Part shown: piece after piece, positions 7,342-53,601 of the stretch
How the letters are laid out: each line of letters begins with the position of its first letter
How positions within the stretch are numbered: the stretch's first letter is position 1
Made by a program: the position numbers and the translations under genes
The notes under the pieces: generated by a model
The model's input: the letters and a program-made list of their open reading frames with translations, nothing else
The model's database searches: none
What the model was told of the DNA's origin: nothing
IMG/VR virus record: IMGVR_UViG_3300029993_000005
Coordinates: 62,001-126,000 of that record
Strand: one strand, 5' to 3'
DNA length: 64,000 bases

Positions 7342-8037
7342 ATGACGAAATTGACGCATAACGAAATTAAAGTCTTGGATCACGGACATGTCCGACTTGT
7401 TGAGTCCATGGGCAGTGACTTGTCTTTGGTGAGGAATGCACGCGTGAGCTACGATGCAGAATGGCGCACAGGTGAGGACGAAGGTAAGGATGCTAAATTG
7501 ATTGACTATCTAGTCAAGAACCGACATACCAGTCCTTTCGAGTCCGTGATCTTTACATTCGACGTAAAAGCTCCCATCTTTGTTTTTCGTCAATGGCATA
7601 GACATCGTACTTTTTCAATTAACGAGGTGTCCGCCAGATACTCAGAACTGCCTGAAGAATTCTATGTACCGGAACTGGAGGACATCACTACGCAAGCTCA
7701 TGGTAACAAGCAGATGCGAACAACTGATCAGCATGAATTCGCTGGTGCCTTGGCCGCAATGATTAAAGAATCAGGTCGAGCCTCGTTCAAAGTCTATCAT
7801 GAACTATTGGCTTCCGGTTGCCCTCGTGAGCTAGCTAGGTCCGTACTTCCTGTTGGCACCTATAGCCATATGTTCTGTACAATTGATCTTCACAACTTGA
7901 TGCACTTCTTGAAACTCAGATTGCACGAACATGCACAGAAAGAGATTCGTGTTTATGCAGAAGCTATGCTTGCTTTGATCGAGCCTATTGTGCCTATAGC
8001 AGTGGCAGCAATGAAGAAACATTTGTTGGGACTCTAA
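7342..8037 (+). CDS. thyX: FAD-dependent thymidylate synthase
   Basis: RHRTFSINEVSARY (RHRx7SxR motif), HTSPFE, ELARSVLP, HAQKEIR. Confidence 0.95.
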   Translation: MTKLTHNEIKVLDHGHVRLVESMGSDLSLVRNARVSYDAEWRTGEDEGKDAKLIDYLVKNRHTSPFESVIFTFDVKAPIFVFRQWHRHRTFSINEVSARYSELPEEFYVPELEDITTQAHGNKQMRTTDQHEFAGALAAMIKESGRASFKVYHELLASGCPRELARSVLPVGTYSHMFCTIDLHNLMHFLKLRLHEHAQKEIRVYAEAMLALIEPIVPIAVAAMKKHLLGL

Positions 8038-28360: not shown

Positions 28361-29203
28361 ATGTCGAACTTAAGAATTACCCCCGAGCATATCGATGCAA
28401 TGATTGTGAATCAGCAGTACCATCAGTTTCCTGGGACCACGCTGATCGCCTGCGCCCTGACCCTCACTGTAGGCCATCACATGGTTGTTGGCTATAGCCG
28501 CCCTGTCGACGAATCCAACTTCAAGTACAAGCTTGGACAGGCTGCTGCACTAAAGAACGCACGAGACCAGATCTGGGAAGTAGCGGGCACCGCCCTTCGC
28601 CTTGCATTGGCGCGAACAGATGGCTATCGTGATCCAGGCCCGTTCTTTGTGGTCAACGCGCTTGACCTAAGCTACAGCCAGGACGGCAGTCTGGTGCCAA
28701 CTCCAAAAGCAGCAGTAACTTCGACAGGGCCGGCCGTCGAAGACGAGCACACGCTTGCACCTGAGAACCGTGAGCCATCTAAAAAGACGAAAGGTGACTT
28801 AATAGCGCTTCTTCGGGAGCGGAACGCGGAAGCTCTTAAAAAGATTGAAGCCCTGGAGCAGTTGTGTGCGGCTGCTTATCAGATGGCGGGCATAGTCAAT
28901 GCACCTGTGCGGTTTCTCGACGCACTGAGTGATGCTGCTAACGGTGAACTCGGTGCTCGTGTTCTGACTGATAACCTCCTGCCAATCAACGCCAATGAAA
29001 GCGGATCCTTCTACGCCGATATGCCACCGGCTAAGAACAGACGTGTGTACCATATCACAGCAGGCGCTGCCGACTGGAATCCGACGACGGCTCAGCTCAA
29101 GGCTCTTGAGGACCAGTTTAAAGATGCAAAATTTGACGACAACGGAAATGCGTTTGTAGCCACTCGCGTCGAGGCCAACGTTTCGGTACTGGATCTGTTC
29201 TGA
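28361..29203 (+). CDS. N4 gp49/Sf6 gp66-like (Acb4-like) protein, paralog B, with extra C-terminal domains
   Basis: ITPEHIDAMIVNQQYHQFPGTTLIACALTL...SNFKYKLGQAAALKNARDQIW. Confidence 0.75.
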   Translation: MSNLRITPEHIDAMIVNQQYHQFPGTTLIACALTLTVGHHMVVGYSRPVDESNFKYKLGQAAALKNARDQIWEVAGTALRLALARTDGYRDPGPFFVVNALDLSYSQDGSLVPTPKAAVTSTGPAVEDEHTLAPENREPSKKTKGDLIALLRERNAEALKKIEALEQLCAAAYQMAGIVNAPVRFLDALSDAANGELGARVLTDNLLPINANESGSFYADMPPAKNRRVYHITAGAADWNPTTAQLKALEDQFKDAKFDDNGNAFVATRVEANVSVLDLF

Positions 29204-30661: not shown

Positions 30662-31387
30662 ATGTCCATGGTCTTTGCCAAACTAAATCAGCACCAACGA
30701 GAATTAGCCTATCGAACGGTAAGTGCTTGGTCTTTCTTCTATATCGTCGGTGACTACTTGCTGAACAATAGACCATTATCAATCGTGCGTATGGGTGACG
30801 GCGAACGTTCTATTATAGACCTTTGCATCAAGGCCTCTGCTAACGGTACTACAGTCAATTCACCTATTGATATCTATGATCAGGCAAAGCGTCAGAACAT
30901 GGGCCTTGACGGCTTGACCTACAAAGATTTATACCGTCGATTGCTAAGGGCTGGTAACGACTGTACTTACTTTGCACCCTCGGTGTCAGGTCTCACCCAA
31001 GAAGCTTATTCCTTGCATCATTATTTCCATCAGAGAGAATCTTACATCGATAATTTCTTTGTCAATATTTGGGACTATGAGGCAAAAGCTACATTGTACA
31101 AAGCAGCCGGATCCATACTCTTCATCCACAAGAATCCTAATACTGCGGCCTCAATTACCCGGCAGTGTAAAGACAGATTTAACATCGACGTTGAATTCAT
31201 TCAAATGGATAAATGGCAACAGGCTGAAGCAACAATTGAACAGGCTCGATCCAGCAGTGCCCGCCTAGTCCTGTTTGCTGCGGGTCCCGCATCTAAGTAT
31301 ATTGCATCAGACATCGTGCAAGGCACCAACAAAATTGCATTGGACCTAGGCAATAGCGTTGATGCTTGGACTTTCGGCAACAACTAA
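30662..31387 (+). CDS. GT-D fold glycosyltransferase-like protein
   Basis: LSIVRMGDGE, LVLFAAGPASK, ALDLGNSVD. Confidence 0.7.
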   Translation: MSMVFAKLNQHQRELAYRTVSAWSFFYIVGDYLLNNRPLSIVRMGDGERSIIDLCIKASANGTTVNSPIDIYDQAKRQNMGLDGLTYKDLYRRLLRAGNDCTYFAPSVSGLTQEAYSLHHYFHQRESYIDNFFVNIWDYEAKATLYKAAGSILFIHKNPNTAASITRQCKDRFNIDVEFIQMDKWQQAEATIEQARSSSARLVLFAAGPASKYIASDIVQGTNKIALDLGNSVDAWTFGNN

Positions 31388-31416
31388 AAATTAGCATTAC
31401 GTAAAGTAGAGAAATT

Positions 31417-32517
31417 ATGAATCCTAAAATTCTGTTTGTACTAAAGCACGTCAAGAATCCCTATGACGGATACTCATGGGACCCTAGCGAGACTCTAAAT
31501 ACTTCCTATTCTGAGGGCAAGCCCCCAATGAGCAGCGGGCTTTATAACAGTGCCAGATTTGTTGCCGATATGTTGAGTGCCCATGATATTGAAGTGAAAC
31601 TAGTTACGGTCAAGGACAACAATGCTATTGCTGCTGAGGTTCAATCCTTCGGTGCCGATATAGTCATTATTGAAGCTTTCTGGGTTGTGCCATCTAAATT
31701 TGAAGAACTAAAGACCCAGTGTCCTGACACTAAGTTTGTGATAAGAAATCATTCGGAAACCCCGTTCCTGGCATCTGATGGAATTGCCTTTGACTGGATG
31801 CTGCAGTACGCGGATATGTCAAATACTTATTTAGCCTGTAATTCAAGACGAATGTTTGACGATACGCGATTCTTGGTCCAGACCAATAGCCCAACTATTA
31901 GTCCTCAACAATTAGACTCCAAGGTATCCTATCTGCCTAATTATTATCCGTTGGACTCAACCGAAATTACTAGGGTCCAGGCCTCAGAGTTTGTTGACGT
32001 CGGGTGTTTCGGTGCCATACGTCTACTCAAGAATCATATGACGCAGGCTGTTGCATCCTTGATGTTCGCTAAATCAAGCGGAAAGCGTTTACGGTTCCAT
32101 ATTAACAGCGGTGGTAGCGATCAATCTGGTGAGCAGATACTGAAGAACCTGCAACGCTTGTTTGCCCACTATCCTCAGCATCAGTTAGTTAGTCATGCTT
32201 GGCTTCCGCATCCGCAGTTCAAGGCCCTCTTGCAGTCAATGGACATCATAGTTCAAGTCTCGTTTTCAGAGACTTTCAATATCATAGCCGCCGATGCCGT
32301 GACGTCAGGTGTAGCAACCATTACTTCAGACGAAGTTTCGTGGACCCACAATTGCTTTAAGGCTGATCCAACGGATAGCTCAAACATAGCTAAGACAATG
32401 GAAAAAGCGTATCTCATCAAGAAGGCTATCCCATCATTCAATCCAAGTCTTAAAGGACTGAAGGCTTATAACAAAGAAGCGGTGCAAGACTGGCTATCTT
32501 TTATTGCCTCACACTGA
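31417..32517 (+). CDS. GT-B fold (GT4-like) glycosyltransferase
   Basis: CFGAIRLLKN, DIIVQVSFSETFNIIAADAVTSGVATITS. Confidence 0.75.
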   Translation: MNPKILFVLKHVKNPYDGYSWDPSETLNTSYSEGKPPMSSGLYNSARFVADMLSAHDIEVKLVTVKDNNAIAAEVQSFGADIVIIEAFWVVPSKFEELKTQCPDTKFVIRNHSETPFLASDGIAFDWMLQYADMSNTYLACNSRRMFDDTRFLVQTNSPTISPQQLDSKVSYLPNYYPLDSTEITRVQASEFVDVGCFGAIRLLKNHMTQAVASLMFAKSSGKRLRFHINSGGSDQSGEQILKNLQRLFAHYPQHQLVSHAWLPHPQFKALLQSMDIIVQVSFSETFNIIAADAVTSGVATITSDEVSWTHNCFKADPTDSSNIAKTMEKAYLIKKAIPSFNPSLKGLKAYNKEAVQDWLSFIASH

Positions 32518-43125: not shown

Positions 43126-44421
43126 ATGGCAACAAACAACTCAGCAGTTCAACTTGAGATGTTGACTCAAGGTTCAGTATGGAAACGTAATGTAGGAAAG
43201 TTTAAGGGTAAAGAAGTCAAATTTCTTTTCCTCACCAATTCGAATCTTCCGGCTAAGGGTCAGCTCAAACACCCGCCTCAAGTGATCTACGTTGATGAAA
43301 AGAATGCGATCTACAACCGTGAATTGGATAGTTTTTTGTCGGCCTACACGTTCTACAACGTTGACAGCGATCTAGAGTCAAAGCTTGAAAGCCTGTTTGT
43401 TTTCAATGAGTCTCTTATTGAAGATGACGAGGAAGAAATTGAATATCAAATCCCAGAGGGCTCAGATCAAGAATCGGTAGAAGAAGCTCAGGTACAACCG
43501 GCAGAAACCGAAACCCAGGTACAAACAGATATCAAGGCCAAGACTGTAGCAGAGCTGTGGTTGGAACCAGCCGAAGATGCGGTAAAGGGCAGCTTTATTA
43601 TTTCGAAGGTTCCGGGTTACGAGAACCCACCGTCAATTGACGAAAAACAATTGGCACTGGCTTTCGTCGGTTACAGCCAAGAGCCGTTGCTTTCGCACGG
43701 CCTATTGGGCCATCGATTGACCTTTAAACAAACTGATAACATTACGGTTGAATCGATTGATCGTGCATTTGCACCGAATGACCACGTGAATACGGTTGAG
43801 TCATTCATCATTCAACATCGAGACAATATTCAACAAGTGTTGTGGACTACTTGGTTGGGTGTCTACCCGCAATTGACGCTTCAGGGTAATTTCTTGACCG
43901 TGCTCGTTGCTACAGATGACTTGCCTTTGACTGCTAATGATGGTCAACAAGAAACTGACATTGAATTGGATGCTGAACATCAAGACGTGCTGACAAACAT
44001 GATGCAAGAGCTTGGACTATCAGCTTTTGGTGGCTCCGAAGTTGAGAAGGCAGAAACAGAAACAGGTATCACCACGGAAGCAGCTACCACGGAACAATCA
44101 GTACTTGCTGAAGCACCCGTAACTGTTCACGTAACTAGAATTGAGGCAGCTGTTGATCACAGTGGTATTAACGTCAGCACAGACCCCGAGTTGGTAGCGA
44201 CTCCGGTGCCCGCAGTTGTTAATGCTCCTGGACCTGTACTAGCCGAGAATCCAGCCTTGGTTGCCCAAGTAGCTCAACAGGTACACGCACATATAACCCA
44301 ACCTCAGCAAGCCTTAGTATCGCCTGTAGAAGCCTTTGTGCAGGCAATTGCGGTTACTAATGTGCAACCTCAAGTAGTGGTCCATAACCAGCAACAACCA
44401 TTCGTACCACCTACGCTATAA
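43126..44421 (+). CDS. large acidic hypothetical protein
   Basis: 431 aa, GAGGA RBS. Confidence 0.7.
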   Translation: MATNNSAVQLEMLTQGSVWKRNVGKFKGKEVKFLFLTNSNLPAKGQLKHPPQVIYVDEKNAIYNRELDSFLSAYTFYNVDSDLESKLESLFVFNESLIEDDEEEIEYQIPEGSDQESVEEAQVQPAETETQVQTDIKAKTVAELWLEPAEDAVKGSFIISKVPGYENPPSIDEKQLALAFVGYSQEPLLSHGLLGHRLTFKQTDNITVESIDRAFAPNDHVNTVESFIIQHRDNIQQVLWTTWLGVYPQLTLQGNFLTVLVATDDLPLTANDGQQETDIELDAEHQDVLTNMMQELGLSAFGGSEVEKAETETGITTEAATTEQSVLAEAPVTVHVTRIEAAVDHSGINVSTDPELVATPVPAVVNAPGPVLAENPALVAQVAQQVHAHITQPQQALVSPVEAFVQAIAVTNVQPQVVVHNQQQPFVPPTL

Positions 44422-44430
44422 ACCAATGGT

Positions 44431-44438
44431 AGTAAATA
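44431..44438 (+). promoter_or_regulatory. AGTAAATA box
   Basis: intergenic. Confidence 0.5.
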
Positions 44439-44454
44439 AGGCTTATACAAGCCG

Positions 44455-44495
44455 AAAAGCCCGGTACCTGTATTTTGGTCCGGGCTTTTATTTTA
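44455..44495 (+). terminator. intrinsic terminator
   Basis: aaaagcccgg...ccgggctttt followed by atttt. Confidence 0.65.
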
Positions 44496-44529
44496 TCTAA
44501 AACGAATATTTCAAACTCCAGGATTACTT

Positions 44530-45555
44530 ATGATGATCGAAAAAGGCCGCTATGTGGTGGCAGCATTAAAGACAGACAAGGGTCGTGGTACACCATTTCT
44601 ACTCAAGGTTGACTCGGTAGATAAGTCAATCGTCCAAGGCACATTGGAGCGTAACTCACATATTTCGCAGCTCAAGAAAACTGTGGAAGTCCTGGTTAAA
44701 GACGTAGTAGCTGATCTTGGTACTAGTCCTCATTATGGAAAGGCCTACGGCTGCGATACTTCGAATATTTATGCGGGTCGAAAATCGCATGACGATTTTG
44801 GTAGTCTCCATTTCTTCTACAAACCTGAAAAGGAAAAGGCCAAACAACTGACGGATGCCTTCACCAAAGTCAGTAAGTCATTGGTTCATGCTGGTCTAGA
44901 CTTTCTTATTGATCCTTCGACCTGTATATGGGAAATTCTACCGTACCATGGTGAGAAATATGCGGGCATGTATATTCGGTCCAAGAATGTAGATAAGACG
45001 CCGCACAGGTTCCAAATCCGTCCAGAGATGATGCCCTACGGAGAATTTCCTTATGTGATTTATCACGAACTGGGACACCACCTACACCTTGAGTTTGCGA
45101 CAGGTAAAAAGCTGCAAGCCGAATGGGTACGCCTGTACAACACGTCAATTAAAGTCACACCAATCAAGAAAGAGAAAAGCCAAGAATTACTTGACGCCTT
45201 GTTAGCCGGTGAGGACCGACCCTCTGATTTTAAGACAAACCTTAGTGAAGAAGATACGCTGGTTTACAAGTGGATTATTCGTGTGATAGGCCAGCAGCAT
45301 AGTCTTTCTATTAAAGAATTGGACCTGTTGTTTGAGGCCCAATATTTTGAGGATATCCGTGGAATCTGGCCTGTGCGTGGGGTACCCATGAAAGATCTAG
45401 CACCTATTGTTACTGAGTATGCCACTAAAAATTTCAAAGAATTAATCGCTGAAAGTTTCGCCTTCCGCATGGTAGGTAAGAAACTGCCCAAATCAGTTGA
45501 TGCACTGCTGGACAAGACCTTAAGCTATGCAAAGGCAAATCATGACAAATCCTGA
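44530..45555 (+). CDS. zincin-like metallopeptidase
   Basis: YHELGHHLH (HExxH) and distal YATKNFKELIAESFA. Confidence 0.65.
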   Translation: MMIEKGRYVVAALKTDKGRGTPFLLKVDSVDKSIVQGTLERNSHISQLKKTVEVLVKDVVADLGTSPHYGKAYGCDTSNIYAGRKSHDDFGSLHFFYKPEKEKAKQLTDAFTKVSKSLVHAGLDFLIDPSTCIWEILPYHGEKYAGMYIRSKNVDKTPHRFQIRPEMMPYGEFPYVIYHELGHHLHLEFATGKKLQAEWVRLYNTSIKVTPIKKEKSQELLDALLAGEDRPSDFKTNLSEEDTLVYKWIIRVIGQQHSLSIKELDLLFEAQYFEDIRGIWPVRGVPMKDLAPIVTEYATKNFKELIAESFAFRMVGKKLPKSVDALLDKTLSYAKANHDKS

Positions 45556-45871
45556 GTCCGAATGGCGTTCCCACTTGACCTACACTTTTGCTGGTGTTAC
45601 CCATTCGTTCGCACATACCGGACATGAGGTGATTTTAACGGAAGCCGACTTACAGCCATTGACAACCGACCAGTATTTGGGAACCCAGCCAAAAGATAGC
45701 AATCCGGTGGTACTTCCTATTGATAGCCTCGTGGGCCTGACGCTCCCTGCATTTGAAGGCGGCTTCTATTTCCACGAATCATACCTCTATGATCCCGTTT
45801 TGCTCAGAAGCTTGCGTAAACTACATAACAAGCGCAAGAAACAGGCACGTGCCAGAACCGGGAGACGCTAA
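45542..45871 (+). CDS. hypothetical protein
   Basis: start refined to ATG 45542. Confidence 0.55.
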   Translation: MTNPESEWRSHLTYTFAGVTHSFAHTGHEVILTEADLQPLTTDQYLGTQPKDSNPVVLPIDSLVGLTLPAFEGGFYFHESYLYDPVLLRSLRKLHNKRKKQARARTGRR

Positions 45872-46050
45872 TGATAAATCCAGATGAACTGGAAGACGTT
45901 GACGTAGCCTACCGCGATTCAGCTGCAAGAGAAGAGACTGGAGTGTCTCGTTCCGAAAAGAAGGTGCGATTCCAAGATCAGAAGCAACTCCAGAACAAAC
46001 AGAAGTCGAAGATGGGCAACAACTTTCTAAAGCTAAAAGGGCGGCGATAA
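45871..46050 (+). CDS. 59-aa charged hypothetical protein
   Basis: fills the gap exactly, TAATG coupling at both ends; not in ORF track. Confidence 0.55.
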   Translation: MINPDELEDVDVAYRDSAAREETGVSRSEKKVRFQDQKQLQNKQKSKMGNNFLKLKGRR

Positions 46051-46547
46051 TGAACTCTGATTATACCCTGGCACTCGATCCGAATGTCTGGTACTACCTT
46101 TTGCGGAATGCTGGTGGCTTTATCCTAGTATTTGGTCTTGCTGCATCCTTAGCCTTTGGTGCGTGTAAAGCCTTTGAGTTCATAGTATTTGAAATTGATT
46201 GTGGCTTTTTCTTTAAACCTAGACGTGAGTTTAGCTTACCATCCAAGGCTAGTCTGCTCCCAGCTCCCGATGTTACTATCATCACAAAATTTGAGTCTAA
46301 CCCCAAGCCTGTTGGCGCTAGCTCATTGAGATACATGTATGCTGGACTTACACTCTACAATCAAGTAATTCTTGTAGACTTCGGAAAGACTAGACCTAGA
46401 CGCTGTTCTGAAACAGATTATAATAAATACGAATCATTCATTTCTCAAGGTAATAGAATCCATGGTCTATTCGTTATTGATGAGGTCGAAGGTCTCGATA
46501 ACATATGGGAGTGTAGTTATGACTATTTCGAGAAACTTCCAGAATGA
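46050..46547 (+). CDS. membrane-anchored hypothetical protein
   Basis: N-terminal TM. Confidence 0.55.
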   Translation: MNSDYTLALDPNVWYYLLRNAGGFILVFGLAASLAFGACKAFEFIVFEIDCGFFFKPRREFSLPSKASLLPAPDVTIITKFESNPKPVGASSLRYMYAGLTLYNQVILVDFGKTRPRRCSETDYNKYESFISQGNRIHGLFVIDEVEGLDNIWECSYDYFEKLPE

Positions 46548-46963
46548 AAATTCAGGGCTATCATGCATCAGATCGTAAATTTGACAGGCCTTGTACTATG
46601 GAATCAAAATTCCGACGAGATTTGGATTCATCGCGTCACGTGAATGGTTCCTTGGGTATTTGGGTGACCACGGACCCAAATGAAAAATCGAAAGACGCCT
46701 ATGGTAAATATTTATATGAATTCGAAGTGGACTTGAAACCAGACCAAGTTGGTACTTATGGGATTAGTCAGTTACGTAGCCTATCCTCTTTTGCAGAAAC
46801 TAAAACTGATGCAGAGTTCGCACATCTCCAGCTTCGTGACCAGTGGCTAAGCCTAGGTCTTAAGTTCATAAACTTGTTAGAACACGATGGAAAGTCTAAG
46901 CTCGGTATTATATTAGACAAGCGCGTTATTAGCCGTTGGGAACTGATCAAAATCAAGGACTGA
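46544..46963 (+). CDS. possible ADP-ribosyltransferase-fold protein
   Basis: GYHASDRKF...GSLGIWVTTD...AYGKYLYEFEV matches YHG(S/T)...GxGxYxT...YG pattern. Confidence 0.45.
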   Translation: MKIQGYHASDRKFDRPCTMESKFRRDLDSSRHVNGSLGIWVTTDPNEKSKDAYGKYLYEFEVDLKPDQVGTYGISQLRSLSSFAETKTDAEFAHLQLRDQWLSLGLKFINLLEHDGKSKLGIILDKRVISRWELIKIKD

Positions 46964-46965
46964 TC

Positions 46966-47352
46966 ATGCATTACAAAAATAAAGACGTGCCATTGGCTAC
47001 CCCACGTTTAGACTTCACCACGCTAGAGGATTTTGAACTTTTAGCAAGCTGTGCCCCCGCCAACATACAGGCCTTGCATATTTTGGTGGACGCCTCTACC
47101 TATGCAATCCTGTGTGATCAAATCGAGGACTTCAAGTATCTCAGGTTCACTCAAGCTGGATTTAAGACCCCGATTCCACATGATGGTTATGTTTGCTACG
47201 TAGCTAATGCTCTGGTGTTCACCGATGCCTGGCTACCAGTAAATAAACAGTGGGTGAACGACAATGGACAGGCCGGACGTCCTCAATTCTTGATTGTGCC
47301 CGAAGAGAATTTCAAACCATATATTCCGAAACCAAAACAACACGGTGACTGA
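46966..47352 (+). CDS. hypothetical protein
   Basis: start refined to ATG 46966. Confidence 0.55.
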   Translation: MHYKNKDVPLATPRLDFTTLEDFELLASCAPANIQALHILVDASTYAILCDQIEDFKYLRFTQAGFKTPIPHDGYVCYVANALVFTDAWLPVNKQWVNDNGQAGRPQFLIVPEENFKPYIPKPKQHGD

Positions 47353-47353
47353 C

Positions 47354-47563
47354 ATGGACCTAGCCGATGACGATGCAATTAGACTAGCCTTGATTCTAGG
47401 TATTGTTTTGCTACTCATGTTCAGTAACCAAGCATTAATCGCCATAGATGCTGTGCACAACAAACTGTTGAGGTTCAATCGCTGGCTTATCCATAATAAG
47501 CTGAAGGCTCCCGTTGTCTTTACCTTGGTGCTTGTTCTCTTAGTTCTGTTAATGAGACCCTAA
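47354..47563 (+). CDS. small two-TM membrane protein
   Basis: two hydrophobic helices. Confidence 0.5.
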   Translation: MDLADDDAIRLALILGIVLLLMFSNQALIAIDAVHNKLLRFNRWLIHNKLKAPVVFTLVLVLLVLLMRP

Positions 47564-47565
47564 AA

Positions 47566-48693
47566 ATGTTTGATAAGAACTACGATTGGTACGTCGTTGG
47601 ATCAGGATTTACTGGTGCTTCATTCGCTAGGGCGCGTGCTGATAAAGGTGACAGAGTGCTCGTGGTTGAACAACGCAACCACATCGGCGGTAATGCTTAC
47701 GACTATTGGGAAAATGGACAACTACTAGCCAAGTATGGACCTCACTTGTTTCACACGAATTCACAAAAAGTAGTGGATTTTCTTTCACGATTCACCAACT
47801 GGCGTCCCTACGAGCACCGAGTAGCGGTCGAGGTCGACGGACAGTCTATACCGTTACCCATCAATTATAATTCACTTGAACAGTGGTTTGGAACCGAGGG
47901 TTCTGCTGAAATACTTATGGACCTGCGTGACCACTATGGTTTCGACAAGACAGTAAATATACTGCAGCTCCGTGAGGACAACAAGACAAAGCTCCTTGAA
48001 GCAGTTGCTGACCTTATTTATAAGAAAGTGTTCGAACCTTATAGCCGAAAGCAGTGGGGCTCGCATTTCGAAAATCTAGATTCTTCGGTTATGGGTCGGG
48101 TGCCTATTCGGTTGAATCGAGATGACCGATATTTCACAGACAGTTTTCAAATGATGCCTACTGACGGCTACACCACAATGTTTGAGAACATGCTTAGTCA
48201 TCCTAACATTCAGATTTTGCTGAACGCTGATTACAACGATCTCATGTCTGGACCCCAGCCAGTTCCTGTTTTCTATACGGGTTCGATTGATGAGTATTTC
48301 AATTACAAACTTGGTATCCTTCCCTACAGAACCTTAGACTTCGCCAACGTGACAAGTGAATACTATAAGCAGAGCATAGCTACTATGAACATGCCTCAGC
48401 ATATGCTTTATACACGGGCCACGAACCAGACATTGGTCAACGGGTATAAAGGACAGCCTCAAGTTATTACCTTTGAGTCCGCACGTGAATTTGAACTTGG
48501 TACTTCAGATATTCGATATTACCCGGTACCCACGTCCGAGACACAAAATTTGTATAAAGACTACGATAAATATGCTGAGACCTATCTCAAGGGTTGCACA
48601 CCCGTGCATTTCGCCGGACGTTTGGGTAGCTATCAATACTTGAATATGGATCAGGCCTGTGCTCAAGGTCTACAGCGGGCAGCTACACTATGA
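47566..48693 (+). CDS. glf: UDP-galactopyranose mutase
   Basis: VVGSGFTG, EQRNHIGGNAYD, YGPHLFHTN, RDDRYFTD, PYRTLDF, RYYP, GRLGSYQYLNMDQA. Confidence 0.95.
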   Translation: MFDKNYDWYVVGSGFTGASFARARADKGDRVLVVEQRNHIGGNAYDYWENGQLLAKYGPHLFHTNSQKVVDFLSRFTNWRPYEHRVAVEVDGQSIPLPINYNSLEQWFGTEGSAEILMDLRDHYGFDKTVNILQLREDNKTKLLEAVADLIYKKVFEPYSRKQWGSHFENLDSSVMGRVPIRLNRDDRYFTDSFQMMPTDGYTTMFENMLSHPNIQILLNADYNDLMSGPQPVPVFYTGSIDEYFNYKLGILPYRTLDFANVTSEYYKQSIATMNMPQHMLYTRATNQTLVNGYKGQPQVITFESAREFELGTSDIRYYPVPTSETQNLYKDYDKYAETYLKGCTPVHFAGRLGSYQYLNMDQACAQGLQRAATL

Positions 48694-48872
48694 CTACTAT
48701 TATGAAAGTTCGTCGATTTTCCGGGCGTTCTGAAGAACTATGCACTTTTATCAATAGTCGCCACATGTCTGAAGCTGTGGTGAGCATATCCGTAGTAGCT
48801 AGACTTAGAGATGGAGCTCCTTGGACTTATGATATTTTCTACAAAGAAGAACAAAGTGAGTTTGCCCCATGA
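48690..48872 (+). CDS. hypothetical protein
   Basis: 60 aa, overlap-coupled. Confidence 0.5.
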   Translation: MTTIMKVRRFSGRSEELCTFINSRHMSEAVVSISVVARLRDGAPWTYDIFYKEEQSEFAP

Positions 48873-49762
48873 TCATAAGCCAGGCACACAAATTCGCGTT
48901 TATTCATAATCCAAAGGTGGCTGGTACGTCTGTACGCAAGGCTATTGCCAGCTACCATGATTATCCAGAGCGCTTCTGGCACCAGGGATTCTTGGAGGAG
49001 CATAATCGTGTAGTGGACTTAGCACATATCCCTTACAGGGACCTGGATGCACGCATAAAGACTGCGTTATCCAAGTGCTTCGTCTTTGGGTTTGTTAGGC
49101 ACCCAGTGTTAAGATTTTGGGCCTCTTTAGCAGAGTTCCGTAGGCAGCATGCTGATTGGAACGTTGCTAAGCTAAGTGCTGACGAGCTATTGAATACTTG
49201 GTTGACACCAGCCAACATTCGTTACGACTGGCGGTTTACGCATTTCTGCCCTCAGCATTACTTCTTCTACGAGGGCAACAAGTGCAAGGCCGATTACATT
49301 GGTCGACACGAGGACTTCAAACGCTCGTGGTCCAATGTTCAAAAATTAATTGGCTTGGACCTCGATCCTTTGGACAACAATCGAAGTCGGGGATATCTAG
49401 AACCAGAGGCTCTGGAACCAGCCTCTTACGCACACATACAACGCCTGTACATGAAAGACACGCTGCTCTTTGGTTACGAGCGTTGGGACACTAGTTGCGA
49501 TGCCATTGCTGAAGACGGAAGGCCAAGTCCTCAGTGTCAACCAATTCCCAATACGCATGAACATCGTGTGGAACTTATCCATGTCCCTTATTTGGATGCC
49601 AGCACGCTAGCCGATCTACCTTTGGGCGAACGTGTAGCCTTTCTCGAAACAAGGGTTCGTCAGTACGAACGTGAGTTCAAGCTCAGAAATAAACACCAAG
49701 AAGCTCAAGAAATAGGTGATAAACAATTTTCTTTACCCGATGAACAAGTTCAAGATATATAA
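48869..49762 (+). CDS. sulfotransferase family 2-like protein
   Basis: FIHNPKVAGTS (5'-PSB), FVRHPVLRFWAS (3'-PB), HFCPQH, YIGRHED. Confidence 0.8.
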   Translation: MIISQAHKFAFIHNPKVAGTSVRKAIASYHDYPERFWHQGFLEEHNRVVDLAHIPYRDLDARIKTALSKCFVFGFVRHPVLRFWASLAEFRRQHADWNVAKLSADELLNTWLTPANIRYDWRFTHFCPQHYFFYEGNKCKADYIGRHEDFKRSWSNVQKLIGLDLDPLDNNRSRGYLEPEALEPASYAHIQRLYMKDTLLFGYERWDTSCDAIAEDGRPSPQCQPIPNTHEHRVELIHVPYLDASTLADLPLGERVAFLETRVRQYEREFKLRNKHQEAQEIGDKQFSLPDEQVQDI

Positions 49763-49775
49763 ATAGGAACTCACT

Positions 49776-50045
49776 ATGAAACGTCGTTCTTTTCTATCCG
49801 TGCTCGGAATGTCTCCGGCCTTGGTAGCGCTGCCCTCAGTCAGTAAAAATGTTCCTGTGGTTAAAGCTTGGACACAACCGGCTGCTGAAAACATTAGTCC
49901 TCTAGACCGTCTGACAGAACTTGATAACCAGGGTGTTCCTATCCCTATGCGCGTATGTGCCCGTGCTGCAGGCATAAACTACGATTTGTTGCTTAAAGAT
50001 ATTCAAGCTGATGCTTATTACCGTCAACTTTTATCGGAAGCCTGA
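49776..50045 (+). CDS. small protein with twin-arginine-like N-terminus
   Basis: MKRRSFLSVLG. Confidence 0.5.
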   Translation: MKRRSFLSVLGMSPALVALPSVSKNVPVVKAWTQPAAENISPLDRLTELDNQGVPIPMRVCARAAGINYDLLLKDIQADAYYRQLLSEA

Positions 50046-50047
50046 CT

Positions 50048-50332
50048 ATGTCTAGAATAGGTGAACAACAATTAGAAGCATGGACATCTGCAAAAACACG
50101 GTGGCCTGCATACACATTTGCTAGGCACTACAAGGGTGGCACTTATCGCGTACTACGCATAGCTTTCGCTGAAGCTGATCTAGAAATTCAGGTGGTGTAT
50201 GAAAATGGTGAAGGCCTAGTATTCACACGCCCACTGGATGATTTTGAGTCCTATGTATTTACTGATATTTCACTTAAGCGATTCGTTGCTATCGATGTGG
50301 TACCTACTGACTGGCAGTCCGTATCATGGTGA
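50048..50332 (+). CDS. DUF1653-like protein
   Basis: RHYKGGTYRVL...VVYE...FTRPLDDF. Confidence 0.75.
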   Translation: MSRIGEQQLEAWTSAKTRWPAYTFARHYKGGTYRVLRIAFAEADLEIQVVYENGEGLVFTRPLDDFESYVFTDISLKRFVAIDVVPTDWQSVSW

Positions 50333-50898
50333 ATAAAGTCATGTTTGGAGACTTTAGCGCTCTGACCTCCAGAGTAACCCCTGATTTGAATCCTCCACCA
50401 CTAAGTCCTAGCCCAAACCCAATAATTCTAAGGGAAACAATGATACAGACCCTAACGTTCGAAGACTCAACTATCCCTGATACTGATTTTGAGGCAATGT
50501 TTCAACTCGCTAAAGATCGTATTGACTTGTGTAAGAAGAAAAATGAGGAGTACGGGAGTAGTTGGTGTAAGCGTGGTGGGGCCGGTGCTTTCTTCAGTGT
50601 GATACGTAAAACAGACAGACTGGAGACTCAGGCTAGGAATAGAAACTACGATCTGTTTAATGTTGACGAGGACCCGAATAGCACAGAGTCTCTGGACGAA
50701 ACCCTGCTCGATACTGTTGCTTACTATCTTTTGATTCTTGAAAAGAGACAGGCTAAGCGTCAAATGATGGCCAATCTAATTGAACAGTTCCAAGCAGCCG
50801 ATACATACCCTATCGGAGCCTCTGTTACGAATTCAAGTAACCATCAAACTAATACGTTTGATATTAGCTATAACAACGGTATCAAAGATGACAGTTAA
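50326..50898 (+). CDS. DUF1599 / nucleotide-modification-associated domain 1-like protein
   Basis: KKKNEEYGSSW...RKTDRL...ESLDETLLDTVAYYLL. Confidence 0.65.
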   Translation: MVNKVMFGDFSALTSRVTPDLNPPPLSPSPNPIILRETMIQTLTFEDSTIPDTDFEAMFQLAKDRIDLCKKKNEEYGSSWCKRGGAGAFFSVIRKTDRLETQARNRNYDLFNVDEDPNSTESLDETLLDTVAYYLLILEKRQAKRQMMANLIEQFQAADTYPIGASVTNSSNHQTNTFDISYNNGIKDDS

Positions 50899-51355
50899 TC
50901 CTCACATAATTATTTGTGACATTGACGGTGTCTGTGTTGATGCTGATCACAGACTACCGTATCTTATGTCCGGAGACAGAGAATCTTATATCAAGGCCGC
51001 TGTTGATGATAAACCCCTAACCCCAGGCTGTGTCATATACAGAAAGTTTTTGAACGATAAGAACTACAAACTATTGTTCGTCACCAGTCGTAAAGACGTT
51101 CTCAATTATCGTCAAGTCACGTTGAATCAAATTCGCAATTTTGTCAGTCAAGAAATCGAGGACTGGCAACTTTTAATGCGTCCAGCAGATTCTGATTTCT
51201 ATACCGTACCTGACGCCGTACTGAAGCCCCTATTAGTAGAAGAACTGGGCATCAAGATCGAGGACATTTTTCTTGTGTTCGAGGACCGTGATTCGACGGT
51301 TAAGGCTTGGCGTGATCTAGGCTGCATAGTTTATCAAACAGCTAGCTGGGATTAA
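50888..51355 (+). CDS. T4 PNK 3'-phosphatase-like HAD protein
   Basis: CDIDG, FVTSR, LLMRP, DAVLK, VFEDRDSTVKAWRDLG; start refined to ATG 50888. Confidence 0.8.
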   Translation: MTVNPHIIICDIDGVCVDADHRLPYLMSGDRESYIKAAVDDKPLTPGCVIYRKFLNDKNYKLLFVTSRKDVLNYRQVTLNQIRNFVSQEIEDWQLLMRPADSDFYTVPDAVLKPLLVEELGIKIEDIFLVFEDRDSTVKAWRDLGCIVYQTASWD

Positions 51356-51411
51356 CCACGAAACTCAATAATCTCCGGTGCTTAATTTTATAATCTATAC
51401 CGGAGAACTGC

Positions 51412-52032
51412 ATGTTAACTCTATCCCAGATAATTAAGAAAACAGGGCCTCTCCGAATTGAAGGCTCCAAGTACGTGGTTATTACAGGTATGAAGAAGGG
51501 GTTTGACAGCTTGGGCCGTCCCTTTGTTGCAGGTGCTAGTTACACCACACATATCATTGGTCCCTATGGAAAGCCCATAGTAAATAAGATAAGACACCGA
51601 TATGTAACGGTCATCACGTTCTTGGACCGTCAACTGAATGTGCTCGTATCCTGTTCTTGTGACGATGCTCAGTACCGAACGGAATATGCACTGCATAGCA
51701 AAGGTGCTGCAGAAATCGAGTACTCGAATGGGGAATATCCATCACACACGAATCCAAAATTAATTCCCTATTGTTGCAAGCACGTATTAGGTCTCTACAA
51801 CAAGATCAAGAGCCAGCTTCCGCAGCCAGCAGGCAAACCGAGAATTACCTTGAAGACTAATCCAGCACAACCTACGGTCTCACCAGTTAAACCACATATT
51901 AAACTCAAACCAGCACCAACCACTGCTCCAGTACCCAGTCCGGTTAAGCCTCATGTCAAGCTCAAGACAGCACCAACTATTCCAACGTCTACACCACCGC
52001 CGAAACCTCGCATCACGCTCAAGTCTAAATAA
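51412..52032 (+). CDS. SWIM zinc-finger protein with Pro/Lys-rich repeat tail
   Basis: VSCSCDD...CCKHV; KPRITLK/KPHIKLK/KPHVKLK/KPRITLK repeats. Confidence 0.65.
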   Translation: MLTLSQIIKKTGPLRIEGSKYVVITGMKKGFDSLGRPFVAGASYTTHIIGPYGKPIVNKIRHRYVTVITFLDRQLNVLVSCSCDDAQYRTEYALHSKGAAEIEYSNGEYPSHTNPKLIPYCCKHVLGLYNKIKSQLPQPAGKPRITLKTNPAQPTVSPVKPHIKLKPAPTTAPVPSPVKPHVKLKTAPTIPTSTPPPKPRITLKSK

Positions 52033-52063
52033 ACTTTAAACCCTTAATTTAGGTGTACTGATC

Positions 52064-52249
52064 ATGATACGAAGAGAAGCGAAATTTGAAGGTGGTCCTT
52101 TAGACGGGAAAGTACTGACGCTCTACATCGGACAGGTTTCCAAACCGGCACCCGTCTACTCCACGTTCCTAGGTGGCTTAGAACATGAGTACAAGCCAAA
52201 GACAGCTAAGGGCCTTGAATATCTCTATCTAGGTCCGCGCAAAACTTAG
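52064..52249 (+). CDS. hypothetical protein
   Basis: GGPLDG motif, AGGT RBS. Confidence 0.55.
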   Translation: MIRREAKFEGGPLDGKVLTLYIGQVSKPAPVYSTFLGGLEHEYKPKTAKGLEYLYLGPRKT

Positions 52250-52263
52250 ACTAGGGATTCTCA

Positions 52264-53241
52264 ATGAGCACCAGAAATTACGAGCATAGCCATACCTTCG
52301 ACGTAATGAAAAACGTCAATGAACAGGTGGTGGGTAATCTGACTAGTCTTCAGTATCTGCAGACCCTAGATCTATTTCTGTGGAATGCACTGACACCTAT
52401 TCACGCTGAATGCCCATCCTTGTTCAACAATTATTTGGCCAAGATAGTTGCCCACCAATCGATTAACGCCAGCACCAAGTTCACTAGCGATGATCGATCC
52501 AAGTTAGCTATTCACTTGTTCAATGTTCTATCTAATCCTGATCCGAAAAAAGCCCACGAACAGGCACGTTTGATGTACATCAATAGAGGCTTGCTTTTCG
52601 GGTTCTTGGCCCTGTTTTTGAAGAAACTTAGGCGCTACGAAAAACTGCATTCTCCGTTCCTTAGCCTAGACCCAGTGGTCAGAAATTCAGAAATTCATCA
52701 AATAGAAAGAAGTGTGGGGCTCAGGCCAAACAGCTCTCTCTACGCGGTCATTCAGCAAGTTAGACACTGGCATGAAAAGGCTTTGTGGTGGAAGGGTGTG
52801 ATCCTAGAAAAGTACACGAGGATGACGCTGCTCCAAGCAAAGTCAGCGTATGAGGATTTCAATCACTACGTGAAGCTTAATGACGTGGTGCAAATCTATT
52901 TGATGGTCCTGAATCGTGCGGTTGACCGTTGTGACGCACGTCAGGGTGTGCTCACCACGTTCATTCAGAACTGGTACAAAAGCGCCCGCTCAGAAATAGC
53001 CGATTTATCAAAGACACAAACCGATGTTAGCTACGAATCAATAGCTGAAGAGCATGGAGATTCGGCATCAGACATTCTAGGTTTTGCGGAACTAGATACG
53101 GGTAGTGAAATGCTGGAGCACATAGCATACACAGCCAAACAGATTGATAAGCATGGCTACGTTAGAGCGCCATTAGGCATTCCTGAGTACGTGACACGAT
53201 CTCAACGTGAGCTCTTAGAGCTATTTATTGTCGAGGACTAG
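52264..53241 (+). CDS. sigma70-family-like transcription factor (region 2 present, region 4 not apparent)
   Basis: LEKYTRMTLLQAK...LNDVVQIYLMVLNRAVDRCDARQGVLTTFIQNWYKSA aligns by eye with sigma70 regions 2.1-2.4. Confidence 0.65.
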   Translation: MSTRNYEHSHTFDVMKNVNEQVVGNLTSLQYLQTLDLFLWNALTPIHAECPSLFNNYLAKIVAHQSINASTKFTSDDRSKLAIHLFNVLSNPDPKKAHEQARLMYINRGLLFGFLALFLKKLRRYEKLHSPFLSLDPVVRNSEIHQIERSVGLRPNSSLYAVIQQVRHWHEKALWWKGVILEKYTRMTLLQAKSAYEDFNHYVKLNDVVQIYLMVLNRAVDRCDARQGVLTTFIQNWYKSARSEIADLSKTQTDVSYESIAEEHGDSASDILGFAELDTGSEMLEHIAYTAKQIDKHGYVRAPLGIPEYVTRSQRELLELFIVED

Positions 53242-53244
53242 TTC

Positions 53245-53601
53245 ATGACCTATTCAAGTTCCAACTCCAGCCGTGAGGCCAGTCTAGAACTGTCTTTGCA
53301 GGCTATGAAGTCCTTGCTCTCAAGCTATGTATTGCGAGCAAAGCAGGCGGAACAAACAGCAGCCCTGTTAATGCAAGAAAAACTAACGGAGGCTCAACTA
53401 GAGGTTCTTCATTCAACAATTCTAGCTCAGTTAGAACAGCATTCGGCAGAGCGTTCAGTGCAACAACAAGCTCTACTGCAAGCCTCGCTAGTTACCCTAA
53501 ACGCAGCAGCAAGCTCACCAGATGAAACATGTAGGACCCTAGTAAATACAATGTTGAAGGACCTAACACTCGCCCTGTCCCACATGAATCCCAGGGCATA
53601 A
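53245..53601 (+). CDS. helical hypothetical protein
   Basis: 118 aa; AGTAAATA box at 53541-53548 near its end. Confidence 0.55.
   Translation: MTYSSSNSSREASLELSLQAMKSLLSSYVLRAKQAEQTAALLMQEKLTEAQLEVLHSTILAQLEQHSAERSVQQQALLQASLVTLNAAASSPDETCRTLVNTMLKDLTLALSHMNPRA

What the first reader, a model, noticed from the sequence alone, without database searches (positions are those of the whole stretch)
47566..49762. Phage-encoded UDP-galactopyranose mutase coupled to a sulfotransferase
Seen: glf, a 60-aa ORF and a sulfotransferase-2-like gene are overlap-coupled. Established: Glf makes UDP-galactofuranose, and this sulfotransferase family uses PAPS on carbohydrates. No PAPS synthesis gene is in the window. 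Inference: with the GT-D and GT-B genes at 30662-32517, the phage may build a sulfated Galf-containing glycan on virion proteins, host surface or DNA.
Basis: partly seen in the sequence, partly recalled or inferred. Interest (0 to 1): 0.62.

Follow-up and report, generated by a model that had tools for sequence, protein, structure and literature searches.

The report
Orphaned Galf-sulfation pair from DNA-modification cassette
A peat jumbo phage carries an intact sugar-mutase and sulfotransferase gene pair which, in at least 13 related phages, sits inside a cluster predicted to decorate thymine in DNA, but this phage has lost the rest of that cluster, so the pair points to a possibly new sulfated DNA modification in its relatives rather than in itself.

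Summary
Glf passes the TIGR00031 equivalog cut-off. The sulfotransferase (ST) keeps its PAPS-binding motifs, and its model best matches heparan-sulfate O-sulfotransferases.

The window lies in a 230-kb phiRSL1-like jumbo phage from peat. In 13 related loci the ST homologue sits in a thymidine (5-hmdU) DNA-hypermodification cassette. That cassette holds a ThyA-like hydroxymethylase, 5-hmdU DNA kinase, TAGT DNA glycosyltransferases and an APS-kinase-like gene. Eleven loci also have glf directly upstream of ST (ten of these 13, plus L018).

This phage has none of those partners anywhere in its genome. It encodes ThyX instead, so it most likely has ordinary thymine. Glf and ST are nevertheless intact and have diverged no faster than core genes.

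Best reading: an orphaned, probably still active sugar-tailoring remnant whose acceptor here is unknown. The GT-D-like/GT-B pair are the only glycosyltransferases detected in the genome, but they belong to a much larger phage family and do not track glf.

The valuable lead is at family level: a predicted sulfated glycosyl-5-hmdU in phage DNA, testable in cultured phiRSL1. I found no paper describing it.

The parts
47566..48693 (+). glf, UDP-galactopyranose mutase (375 aa)
   Evidence: Pfam GLF 2.6e-56 plus NAD_binding_8. TIGR00031 equivalog 333 bits, above the 303.75 cut-off. 3HDQ E 7e-88 with the substrate/FAD motif blocks aligned. 45-55% identical to the Glf of full-cassette relatives.
48690..48872 (+). 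ORF60, a 60-codon frame bridging glf and ST with ATGA overlaps at both ends; coding status uncertain
   Evidence: No Pfam or PHROG match. Relatives have either no ORF here or unrelated ones of 67 and 93 aa. Sequence read.
48869..49762 (+). PAPS-dependent carbohydrate-type sulfotransferase (297 aa; catalytic domain about 1-205, C-terminal helical extension)
   Evidence: PF03567 33 bits; phrog_3347 1.2e-21. Invariant K16 in NPKVAGTS, plus R77, R82, H125 and Q129. Model pLDDT 89. HS 2-O-sulfotransferase Z 10.6, rmsd 3.4, 169 residues aligned.
44530..45555 (+). Conserved left flank of the variable island: peptidase-like protein (341 aa)
   Evidence: phrog_17197 2.6e-83. 57-63% identical homologues lie upstream of the cassette in L004, L015-L017, L021 and G006.
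46936..47352 (+). 138-aa ORF conserved upstream of the cassette in relatives
   Evidence: tblastn matches to L016 6758-7165, L017 7430-7819 and G006 (E about 1e-19).
49776..50045 (+). 89-aa ORF; in relatives its homologue follows the GT1-like gene that is missing here
   Evidence: tblastn matches to L016 12151-12495 (1.6e-12) and L021 12491-12751 (7e-18).
50326..50898 (+). Conserved right flank: 190-aa protein of unknown function found next to the cassette in all relatives
   Evidence: 52-68% identical over about 110 aa to L004, L007 and L015-L017. phrog_1485. No PDB sequence match.
50780..51355 (+). Conserved right flank: HAD/PNKP-type phosphatase-like protein
   Evidence: Homologues in L015-L017 carry PF25109 HAD_PNKP. 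39-44% identical by tblastn.
52264..53241 (+). Conserved right flank: phage sigma-factor-like protein
   Evidence: phrog_17569 9.7e-78. 60-67% identical in relatives.
30662..31387 (+). GT-D-fold-like glycosyltransferase candidate (241 aa)
   Evidence: PF22882 45.8 bits, above the cut-off of 27. Atlas GT-D-like clusters, TM 0.82-0.83. Homologues in G001, phiRSL1 ORF259 and G006.
31417..32517 (+). GT-B (GT4-like) glycosyltransferase candidate (366 aa); the only GT1-type hit in the genome
   Evidence: Sub-threshold Pfam GT1 hits. Atlas structural matches to GT4 families, TM 0.71-0.74. 2,481 homologues, mostly on jumbo-phage-sized contigs. Sole PF00534 hit in G000.
7342..8037 (+). ThyX, flavin-dependent thymidylate synthase (231 aa): indicates that canonical dTMP is made
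   Evidence: PF02511 2.7e-54. Absent from the complete relatives G003 and phiRSL1, which carry the ThyA-like gene instead.

Best explanation
glf-ORF60-ST is the surviving sugar-tailoring part of a seven-gene thymidine (5-hmdU) DNA-hypermodification cassette.

In related phiRSL1-like jumbo phages, that cassette occupies the same syntenic island, between the peptidase-like gene and the 190-aa / HAD-PNKP / sigma genes. Its seven genes are:
- ThyA-like dUMP hydroxymethylase
- 5-hmdU DNA kinase
- a TAGT DNA glycosyltransferase of about 310 aa
- a GT1-like protein of about 440 aa
- an APS-kinase-like P-loop kinase
- Glf
- ST

In those relatives the inferred pathway is: 5-hmdU enters DNA, glycosyltransferases add sugar (Galf supplied by Glf), and ST sulfates the sugar with PAPS.

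This phage keeps only Glf and ST. It has no hydroxymethylase, DNA kinase, TAGT, GT1-like or APS kinase gene, and it encodes ThyX. Its DNA therefore most likely contains ordinary thymine and cannot receive the ancestral modification.

Both enzymes are intact and have diverged at the normal rate, so they are probably still active. Glf would convert host UDP-Galp to UDP-Galf. ST would use host-made PAPS to O-sulfate a sugar acceptor. That acceptor would be made either by the genome's only detected glycosyltransferases (the GT-D-like/GT-B pair) or by host enzymes.

Shown: gene identities, synteny, the absences, and the rates of divergence. Inferred: all chemistry, enzyme activity, and the acceptor.
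For: Cassette context in relatives:
- Pfam on L004, L006 and L007 (phiRSL1).
- Precomputed Pfam on L015-L019 and L021-L023.
- Local tblastn on G006, L034 and L008.
- The gene order is rearranged between subgroups, with glf-ST lying between the DNA kinase and the ThyA-like gene in L019, L022 and L023. This argues for functional linkage rather than accidental proximity.
- L023 adds a GalE-like epimerase.
- The ThyA-like protein best matches a pyrimidine hydroxymethylase (MilA, 1e-17). It keeps a uracil-type Asn where MilA has Asp. 5-HMUDK is known to co-associate with dUMP hydroxymethylase (PMC5889632).

Absences in the own genome: PF00303, PF18723, PF20691 and PF01583 were not found. tblastn with every cassette protein found only Glf, ST and the flanking ORFs.

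Thymidylate route: ThyX is present here. It is absent from the complete ThyA-like-bearing relatives.

Intactness and rate:
- 36 of 37 highly conserved ST columns are kept. The single exception (S85A, 'RFWAS') is shared with full-cassette relatives.
- Identities to relatives are 45-55% for Glf and 49-63% for ST, against 52-67% for three core genes. They equal the identities among the relatives themselves.
- In the ST tree this phage nests inside the full-cassette clade (aLRT 99), with a median-length terminal branch.
- There is no GC anomaly.

ST clades follow the sugar-supply gene (glf versus nucleotidyltransferases). A Pantoea homologue sits in a glf/WbbM-like O-antigen cluster. Both support a sugar acceptor.
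Against: - No Galf-transferase is recognisable in this genome. The GT-D-like/GT-B pair also occurs in phages without glf, so it presumably uses another donor.
- No activity, expression or chemistry data exist. No RNA run holds the locus.
- Intactness could simply reflect a recent loss of the cassette. No close relative (above 63% ST identity) was found that could date the loss.
- The population in peat is nearly clonal (1 SNP in 5.9 kb), so present-day selection could not be measured.
- The genome is rated 97% complete, not 100%.
Confidence: 0.5

Rival explanations
1. Inert relic. The cassette was dismantled recently, and Glf and ST are leftovers with no acceptor in this phage. They are still intact only because too little time has passed for them to decay.
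For: - Every recognisable partner is gone: both cassette glycosyltransferases, the APS kinase, the DNA kinase and the hydroxymethylase.
- No Galf-transferase candidate is specific to glf.
- A 183-bp ORF of no known family has been inserted between the two genes.
Against: - At least two to three separate clean deletions removed five genes without debris, yet spared exactly this adjacent pair and its translational coupling.
- There is no excess divergence or loss of conserved residues.
- A second solo ST (L005) also persists in a ThyX-encoding relative.
Confidence: 0.27
2. The pair still modifies DNA by an unrecognised route. A divergent thymine dioxygenase or other hydroxylase would create the handle after replication. 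The GT-D-like/GT-B pair would act as DNA glycosyltransferases using UDP-Galf, and ST would then sulfate the product.
For: - Post-replicative phage T-dioxygenases exist, and many escape the TET/JBP Pfam model (PMC13229309).
- The GT pair lies in the replication module beside the helicase, exonuclease and DNA polymerase genes.
- A phage Glf has been proposed to feed DNA glycosylation in Rhizobium phage RL38J1 (PMC13326640).
Against: - PF12851 gives only an 11.8-bit hit that contains a stop and is out of frame with the 653-aa ORF covering it.
- No TAGT was found.
- The GT pair is unrelated to any cassette protein.
- Its family is far more widespread than ST, and it is absent from complete ST-bearing G003.
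Confidence: 0.13
3. The DNA-cassette association is coincidental. The island would be a hotspot for accessory genes, and in all these phages Glf-ST (with the neighbouring glycosyltransferases) would build a sulfated glycan on host envelope or virion proteins, independent of 5-hmdU.
For: - The island varies between relatives.
- The nearest bacterial homologue works in an O-antigen cluster.
- Small membrane-like ORFs lie upstream of glf here.
Against: - The seven genes co-occur across deep divergence (ST identity down to 32-35%) and across gene-order rearrangements. One case, L018, lies in a different genomic context.
- TAGT is by definition a DNA-base glycosyltransferase family.
- In the two loci (this phage and L005) where no ThyA-like or 5-HMUDK gene was found, the cassette glycosyltransferases and the APS kinase were also not found.
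Confidence: 0.08

Closest known systems
Thymidine (5-hmdU) hypermodification clusters of phages ViI, M6, SP10 and PhiW-14 (Iyer et al. 2013; Lee et al. 2018, 2021; PMC5889632, PMC8989533)
   Same: In the relatives of this phage, the ST/Glf module is embedded with the two defining genes of these clusters: a ThyA-family dUMP hydroxymethylase and 5-HMUDK.
   Different: The known clusters append amino acids or polyamines through aGPT-Pplase/AADT, PLP and radical-SAM enzymes. Here the partners are TAGT and GT1-like glycosyltransferases, Glf, a sulfotransferase and an APS-kinase-like gene. The window's own phage has neither defining gene.
Glycosylated 5-hydroxycytosine pathway of Rhizobium phage RL38J1 / Pootjesviridae, with a phage UDP-galactopyranose mutase (Lee et al. 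2026, PMC13326640)
   Same: A phage-encoded Glf is proposed to supply UDP-Galf for glycosylating a modified pyrimidine in DNA. The cluster also holds a ThyA homologue and glycosyltransferases.
   Different: That system uses 5-hydroxycytosine, made by a ThyA homologue with the D169N signature. It has no sulfotransferase and no 5-HMUDK. The ThyA-like protein of these relatives keeps Asp at that position. The Glf here is only 32% identical to those of Rhizobium/Agrobacterium phages.
Ralstonia phage phiRSL1 ORF230-238 (annotated sulfotransferase-like protein, APS kinase, thymidylate synthase family)
   Same: It is a cultured member of the same phage group. Its ST is 40% identical, and the island has the same flanks and the same GT-D-like/GT-B pair (ORF259/258).
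   Different: phiRSL1 has the full 5-hmdU cassette and nucleotidyltransferases instead of glf. Its ST falls in a different clade. Five full-text searches and term checks in the four DNA-modification and jumbo-phage papers read gave no link between this cluster and DNA modification.
ABC-transporter-dependent galactan-type O-antigen cluster of Pantoea dispersa (wzm, wzt, glf, DUF4422+GT8 WbbM-like, GT1, GT2, sulfotransferase)
   Same: An ST homologue (44% identity) co-occurs with glf and glycosyltransferases, which implies sulfation of a Galf-containing glycan.
   Different: It is a bacterial cell-surface polysaccharide pathway with export genes. The phage has no export genes and no DUF4422, GT2 or GT8 transferase.

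Membership tests
UDP-galactopyranose mutase (Glf, EC 5.4.99.9) | Full-length match to the curated equivalog model, above its trusted cut-off | tested here: met
   TIGR00031 scores 333.1 bits against a cut-off of 303.75, covering residues 6-373. Pfam GLF matches 1-203 of 203 profile positions, 2.6e-56.
UDP-galactopyranose mutase (Glf, EC 5.4.99.9) | N-terminal Rossmann FAD-binding motif, plus the conserved substrate-binding Arg/Tyr/Trp blocks seen in solved UGMs | tested here: met
   VVGSGFTGAS with NAD_binding_8 1.9e-16. The blocks YGPHLFHTNS, YSRKQWG, RVPIRLNRDDRYF..Q.MP.DGYT, LPYRTLDF, YYPVP and GRLGSYQYLNMDQ align to 3HDQ. Individual residue roles were not verified.
UDP-galactopyranose mutase (Glf, EC 5.4.99.9) | Catalyses UDP-Galp <-> UDP-Galf | not testable with these tools
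   Needs an enzyme assay.
PAPS-dependent sulfotransferase, Sulfotransfer_2 (carbohydrate O-sulfotransferase type) | Family profile match above the gathering score, and the sulfotransferase fold | tested here: met
   PF03567 scores 33 bits against a cut-off of 22. In the model (pLDDT 89), residues 5-204 align to HS 2-O-sulfotransferase at Z 10.6 and to 6-OST at Z 9.8. Nearly all top-50 hits are sulfotransferases. No PDB match by sequence alone.
PAPS-dependent sulfotransferase, Sulfotransfer_2 (carbohydrate O-sulfotransferase type) | 5'-phosphosulfate-binding loop (PKxxGT/S) with the catalytic Lys | tested here: met
   N14-P-K16-V-A-G19-T-S21. P15, K16 and G19 are invariant in 60 homologues.
PAPS-dependent sulfotransferase, Sulfotransfer_2 (carbohydrate O-sulfotransferase type) | 3'-phosphate-binding motif (R...R..S) | tested here: inconclusive
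   R77 is invariant and R82 is conserved. The usually conserved Ser (column 85) is Ala here, with Ser at position 86. The same 'RFWAS/G' variant occurs in P0003-P0005, which come from full-cassette phages.
PAPS-dependent sulfotransferase, Sulfotransfer_2 (carbohydrate O-sulfotransferase type) | Acceptor is a carbohydrate hydroxyl | not testable with these tools
   The support is indirect. The closest folds are glycosaminoglycan O-sulfotransferases. ST clades track the sugar-supply gene. A bacterial homologue lies in a Galf O-antigen cluster.
5-hmdU thymidine DNA-hypermodification system | ThyA-family dUMP hydroxymethylase | tested here: not met
   PF00303 is absent from the 230-kb genome. tblastn with relatives' proteins finds nothing. 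It is present in G001, G003, G004 and G005 and in L015-L017, L019, L022, L023, L034 and G006.
5-hmdU thymidine DNA-hypermodification system | [quoted passage not shown] | tested here: not met
   Absent from the own genome. Present beside ST in 12 relatives.
5-hmdU thymidine DNA-hypermodification system | DNA-base glycosyltransferase (TAGT, PF20691) or another group-transfer enzyme acting on DNA | tested here: not met
   PF20691 is absent. There is no homologue of the cassette proteins of about 310 aa or about 440 aa.
5-hmdU thymidine DNA-hypermodification system | Modified thymidine in virion DNA | not testable with these tools
   Needs LC-MS or raw long-read signal. The presence of ThyX argues for canonical T.
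   All four are present in this phage, G001 and G006. phiRSL1 has the GT pair and ST but no glf. Complete G003 has ST but no GT pair. GT-B has 2,481 homologues against 63 for ST.

The most novel reading that the evidence does not exclude
The Glf-ST module belongs to a pathway that writes a sulfated sugar onto 5-hydroxymethyl-uracil in the DNA of phiRSL1-like jumbo phages. The sugar would be galactofuranose in the glf-type cassettes and another sugar in phiRSL1. A sulfate ester on a DNA base adduct has not, to my knowledge or in the papers searched here, been described. This window's phage would then be a natural variant that lost the base handle, reverted to ThyX and thymine, and kept the sugar-tailoring pair for another use.
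Probability: 0.4. Interest if true: 0.85.

Novelty: new variant of a known kind. Interest (0 to 1): 0.6.

Why it matters
Phage DNA hypermodifications defeat restriction enzymes and CRISPR nucleases, and they supply tools for biotechnology. Known thymidine hypermodifications carry amino acids, polyamines or sugars. None is known to carry sulfate.

The comparative result here makes a concrete, testable prediction for a cultured phage. phiRSL1 ORF230-238 should yield glycosylated, sulfated 5-hmdU. A glf-type cassette should do the same with galactofuranose.

The window's phage is useful as a natural contrast. It is the same phage group and the same island, but the base-activation genes are replaced by ThyX, while Glf and ST persist. 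That asks what else a phage does with UDP-Galf and PAPS.

It also cautions against annotating phage glf or sulfotransferase genes as host-surface 'auxiliary metabolic genes' without looking at their context.

Tried and rejected
- **Nucleotide search.** Megablast of the locus against 50,697 phage records found nothing. Relatives are visible only at protein level.
- **PDB by sequence.** The search gave nothing for ST or GT-B, only noise for GT-D-like and only noise for the 190-aa flank protein. Foldseek on the ST model gave only weak E-values of 0.012 or worse. The VIA-align second look was needed to obtain usable Z scores.
- **Promoters and terminators.** The scan of 44000-53500 gave counts near shuffle expectation (promoter-like 13 vs 15.7 ± 4.2; terminator-like 12 vs 7.7 ± 2.8) and no + strand terminator between 44,800 and 52,600, which includes the island. 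No operon boundaries can be claimed.
- **Present-day selection.** I tried to measure it from strain variants in four peat runs. The low k-mer shares reflected fragmentary assemblies, not divergence: only one SNP in 5.9 kb. pN/pS is therefore impossible. Pairwise dN/dS against relatives was not attempted, because synonymous sites are saturated at 50-60% protein identity.
- **Expression.** No RNA run holds the locus.
- **TET/JBP.** The single sub-threshold hit contains an in-frame stop and is out of frame with the 653-aa ORF covering it, so I treated it as spurious.
- **DUF4422 (Galf-transferase).** The search found nothing, but its control genomes were also silent, so that absence is weak evidence.
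- **ThyX in G006.** Its absence there is uninformative, because that contig ends in the corresponding region.
- **Searches left unused.** The large exhaustive protein search and the complex prediction were not run. No claim here rests on absence of relatives or on protein binding.
Full report
**1. Observation**

Both junctions are ATGA overlaps.

- **Glf** is a full-length UDP-galactopyranose mutase. Pfam GLF scores 2.6e-56, with NAD_binding_8. TIGR00031 scores 333 bits against a cut-off of 303.75. D. radiodurans UGM 3HDQ matches at 7e-88, with the conserved motif blocks aligned.
- **ST** matches Sulfotransfer_2 above threshold and phrog_3347. It keeps the NPKVAGTS loop and the invariant K16, R77, H125 and Q129 of 60 homologues.
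- **The ST model** (pLDDT 89) aligns best to heparan-sulfate 2-O-, 6-O- and 3-O-sulfotransferases, Z 10.6-9.4. Cytosolic SULTs score lower.
- **ORF60** has no family and no conserved counterpart in relatives. Its coding status is open.

**2. Which genome**

The window is bases 62001-126000 of a 230,110-bp virus record rated 97% complete. It has no close nucleotide match among deposited phages.

Protein synteny places it with Ralstonia phage phiRSL1 and a set of uncultured jumbo-phage contigs. The locus occurs in 24 peat metagenome runs. Contigs from four of them bridge every junction of the island with at most one difference, so the gene order is real.

**3. The pair in relatives**

The ST homologue lies in one syntenic variable island. 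The left flank is a peptidase-like gene (window 44530-45555). The right flank is a 190-aa gene, a HAD/PNKP-like gene and a sigma-factor-like gene (window 50326-53241).

In 13 related loci the island holds a thymidine-hypermodification gene set:
- a ThyA-family protein (PF00303)
- a 5-hmdU DNA kinase (PF18723)
- one to four TET-associated DNA glycosyltransferases (TAGT, PF20691)
- an APS-kinase-like P-loop kinase (PF01583)
- ST

The 13 loci are L004/G001, L006/G003, L007 (phiRSL1), L008/G005, L015, L016, L017, L019, L021, L022, L023, L034 and G006. L021's contig ends before the last genes.

Eleven loci have glf immediately upstream of ST, usually with a direct overlap. These are L004, L015-L019, L021-L023, L034 and G006.

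Across those glf-bearing loci a seven-gene core recurs: Glf, ST, a GT1-like protein of about 440 aa, a TAGT of about 310 aa, the APS-kinase-like gene, 5-HMUDK and the ThyA-like gene. L018, which lies in another genomic context, shows APS kinase-Glf-ST-319 aa-TAGT, with no kinase or ThyA-like gene within 9 kb.

Several points argue that the association is functional:
- **Gene order differs between subgroups.** One order is APSK-Glf-ST-GT-TAGT-HMUDK-ThyA. The other is HMUDK-GT-Glf-ST-TAGT-APSK-ThyA.
- **L023 adds a GalE-like epimerase**.
- **phiRSL1-type cassettes lack glf.** They carry sugar nucleotidyltransferases instead, and their STs form a separate clade. The ST clade therefore follows the sugar-supply gene.
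- **The ThyA-like protein best matches the pyrimidine hydroxymethylase MilA** (1e-17). It keeps Asp at the ThyA-169 position, and has Asn where the cytosine-specific MilA has Asp. With 5-HMUDK alongside, this points to dUMP hydroxymethylation. The co-association of 5-HMUDK with dUMP hydroxymethylase is documented in PMC5889632; the role of these residues is described in PMC13326640.
- **The APS-kinase-like protein matches only APS-kinase models best**, but far below their cut-offs. Its role in PAPS supply is an inference.

**4. What this phage has**

None of the partners is present.
- PF00303, PF18723, PF20691, PF01583, PF01747 and PF01507 are absent from the 230 kb.
- tblastn with every cassette protein of eight relatives finds only Glf, ST and the small or flanking ORFs.
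- Relative to L016 and L021, the missing genes lie in at least three separate blocks: upstream of glf, directly after ST, and further downstream. The small neighbouring ORFs survive.
- The phage encodes ThyX at 7342-8037 (2.7e-54).
- ThyX and the ThyA-like gene are mutually exclusive in the data. The complete genomes G003 and phiRSL1 have ThyA-like only. This phage and the fragment G002 have ThyX only. G002 also carries a solo ST (L005) next to PrkA/DUF444/SpoVR genes.
- A TET/JBP dioxygenase is not detectable.
- There is no epimerase or GT2, and only one GT1-type hit, the GT-B at 31417-32517. DUF4422 was also not found, but its control genomes were silent too.

**5. Are Glf and ST decaying?**

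The evidence says no.
- 36 of 37 highly conserved ST columns are kept. The one exception is shared with full-cassette relatives.
- Identities to relatives are 45-55% for Glf and 49-63% for ST. That equals the identities among the relatives themselves and parallels three core genes at 52-67%.
- In a quick maximum-likelihood tree, the ST nests within the full-cassette clade (aLRT 99) with a median terminal branch. The other solo ST (L005) sits on a long stem. The careful tree search did not finish, so the topology is provisional.
- GC content is unremarkable.
- Present-day selection could not be measured, because the peat population is almost clonal.

**6. The GT-D-like/GT-B pair**

Both are credible glycosyltransferase folds, and they are conserved in G001, G006 and phiRSL1 (ORF259/258, beside the DNA polymerase).

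They are absent from complete G003 and from G005 (75% complete), which have ST. phiRSL1 has them without glf. GT-B has about 40 times more homologues than ST. Neither is related to any cassette protein.

So the pair has a function of its own. It may or may not accept UDP-Galf here.

**7. Interpretation**

Most likely (confidence about 0.5), the pair is an orphaned but still active remnant of a DNA-hypermodification cassette. Glf would make UDP-Galf from host UDP-Gal. ST would use host PAPS on a sugar acceptor that is not 5-hmdU-linked.

The sub-claims differ in strength:
- enzyme identities: about 0.9
- origin in the DNA cassette: about 0.85
- no ancestral DNA modification in this phage: about 0.75
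- retained activity on another acceptor: about 0.55

The rivals are an inert relic (0.27), DNA modification by an unrecognised route (0.13), and a coincidental association with the DNA genes in all these phages (0.08).

**8. Comparison with the literature**

Phage glf is common. It occurs in 89 phage records, all below 41% identity. A 2026 study proposes that a phage Glf feeds glycosylation of 5-hydroxycytosine in Rhizobium phage RL38J1 (PMC13326640).

phiRSL1's ST and APS kinase are annotated in its record. Full-text searches found no paper that links a sulfotransferase to DNA hypermodification or discusses the phiRSL1 cluster in that light. The library does not cover all journals, so this absence is provisional.

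**9. Verdict**

The locus itself is a reduced variant of a known kind of system. The family-level prediction, sulfated glycosyl-5-hmdU in DNA, is the interesting and directly testable part.

Noticed in passing
window 9551-10129 (+): A 192-aa phage protein with a GmrSD_N (DUF262, ParB-like) domain, 39.9 bits against a cut-off of 33.2. GmrSD enzymes cut glycosylated hydroxymethyl-pyrimidine DNA. In a phage that seems to have given up such a modification, it could target modified rivals, but this is speculation.
   Followed up: no
window 7342-8037 (+), with neighbours 8040-8534 and 6089-7183: ThyX lies in a poorly conserved region. It sits next to a 164-aa ORF with a weak N6/N4 DNA-methylase hit (E 0.004, below cut-off) and a 364-aa protein with a RyR domain. 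ThyX and the ThyA-like hydroxymethylase are mutually exclusive among the relatives examined.
   Followed up: partly
window 51412-52032 (+): A 206-aa protein with a SWIM-like Cys/His pattern. It is followed by a Pro/Thr-rich C-terminus with repeated KP(R/H)(I/V)(T/K)LK units. Its N-terminal 140 aa are conserved in relatives; phrog_18980, function unknown.
   Followed up: no
window 16115-16927 (+); also L022 643-1467: An R2K-clade ATP-grasp protein (PF18299/PF14243, about 1e-18). A homologous domain architecture lies a few kb from the cassette in L022.
   Followed up: no
L005 509-6207 (contig G002): A phage contig carries the bacterial PrkA / DUF444 / SpoVR triad plus an SPFH/Band-7 protein, just upstream of a solo sulfotransferase.
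   Followed up: no
L019 12925-13293; L023 18725-18765: Relatives carry Acb2/Tad1-like and Acb1-like (anti-CBASS/anti-Thoeris sponge or nuclease) genes within a few kb of the hypermodification cassette. YfbR-like dNMP phosphohydrolase and type IB topoisomerase genes lie there too.
   Followed up: no
window 47294-47563 (+) and 46050-46547 (+): Small ORFs just upstream of glf have strongly hydrophobic stretches that look like membrane segments, judged by eye from the translations. They have no family and no counterpart in relatives.
   Followed up: no
window 62523-63998 (+, runs off the window): A long ORF whose C-terminal part matches homing/HNH endonuclease PHROGs (1e-31) and, weakly, a Mom-like DNA-modification PHROG.
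   Followed up: no
window 28361-29203 (+): An N4 gp49/Sf6 gp66-family protein. Its C-terminal part shares a short domain with the conserved 190-aa island-flank protein, and a third copy lies just beyond the window end, at about 64936-65157 in window numbering.
   Followed up: no
window 47674-47707 and 47806-47840: In peat runs X13 and X17, contigs of other organisms match only about 34 bases inside glf and then diverge (loose ends). These are probably conserved stretches of unrelated glf genes, not variants of this phage.
   Followed up: no
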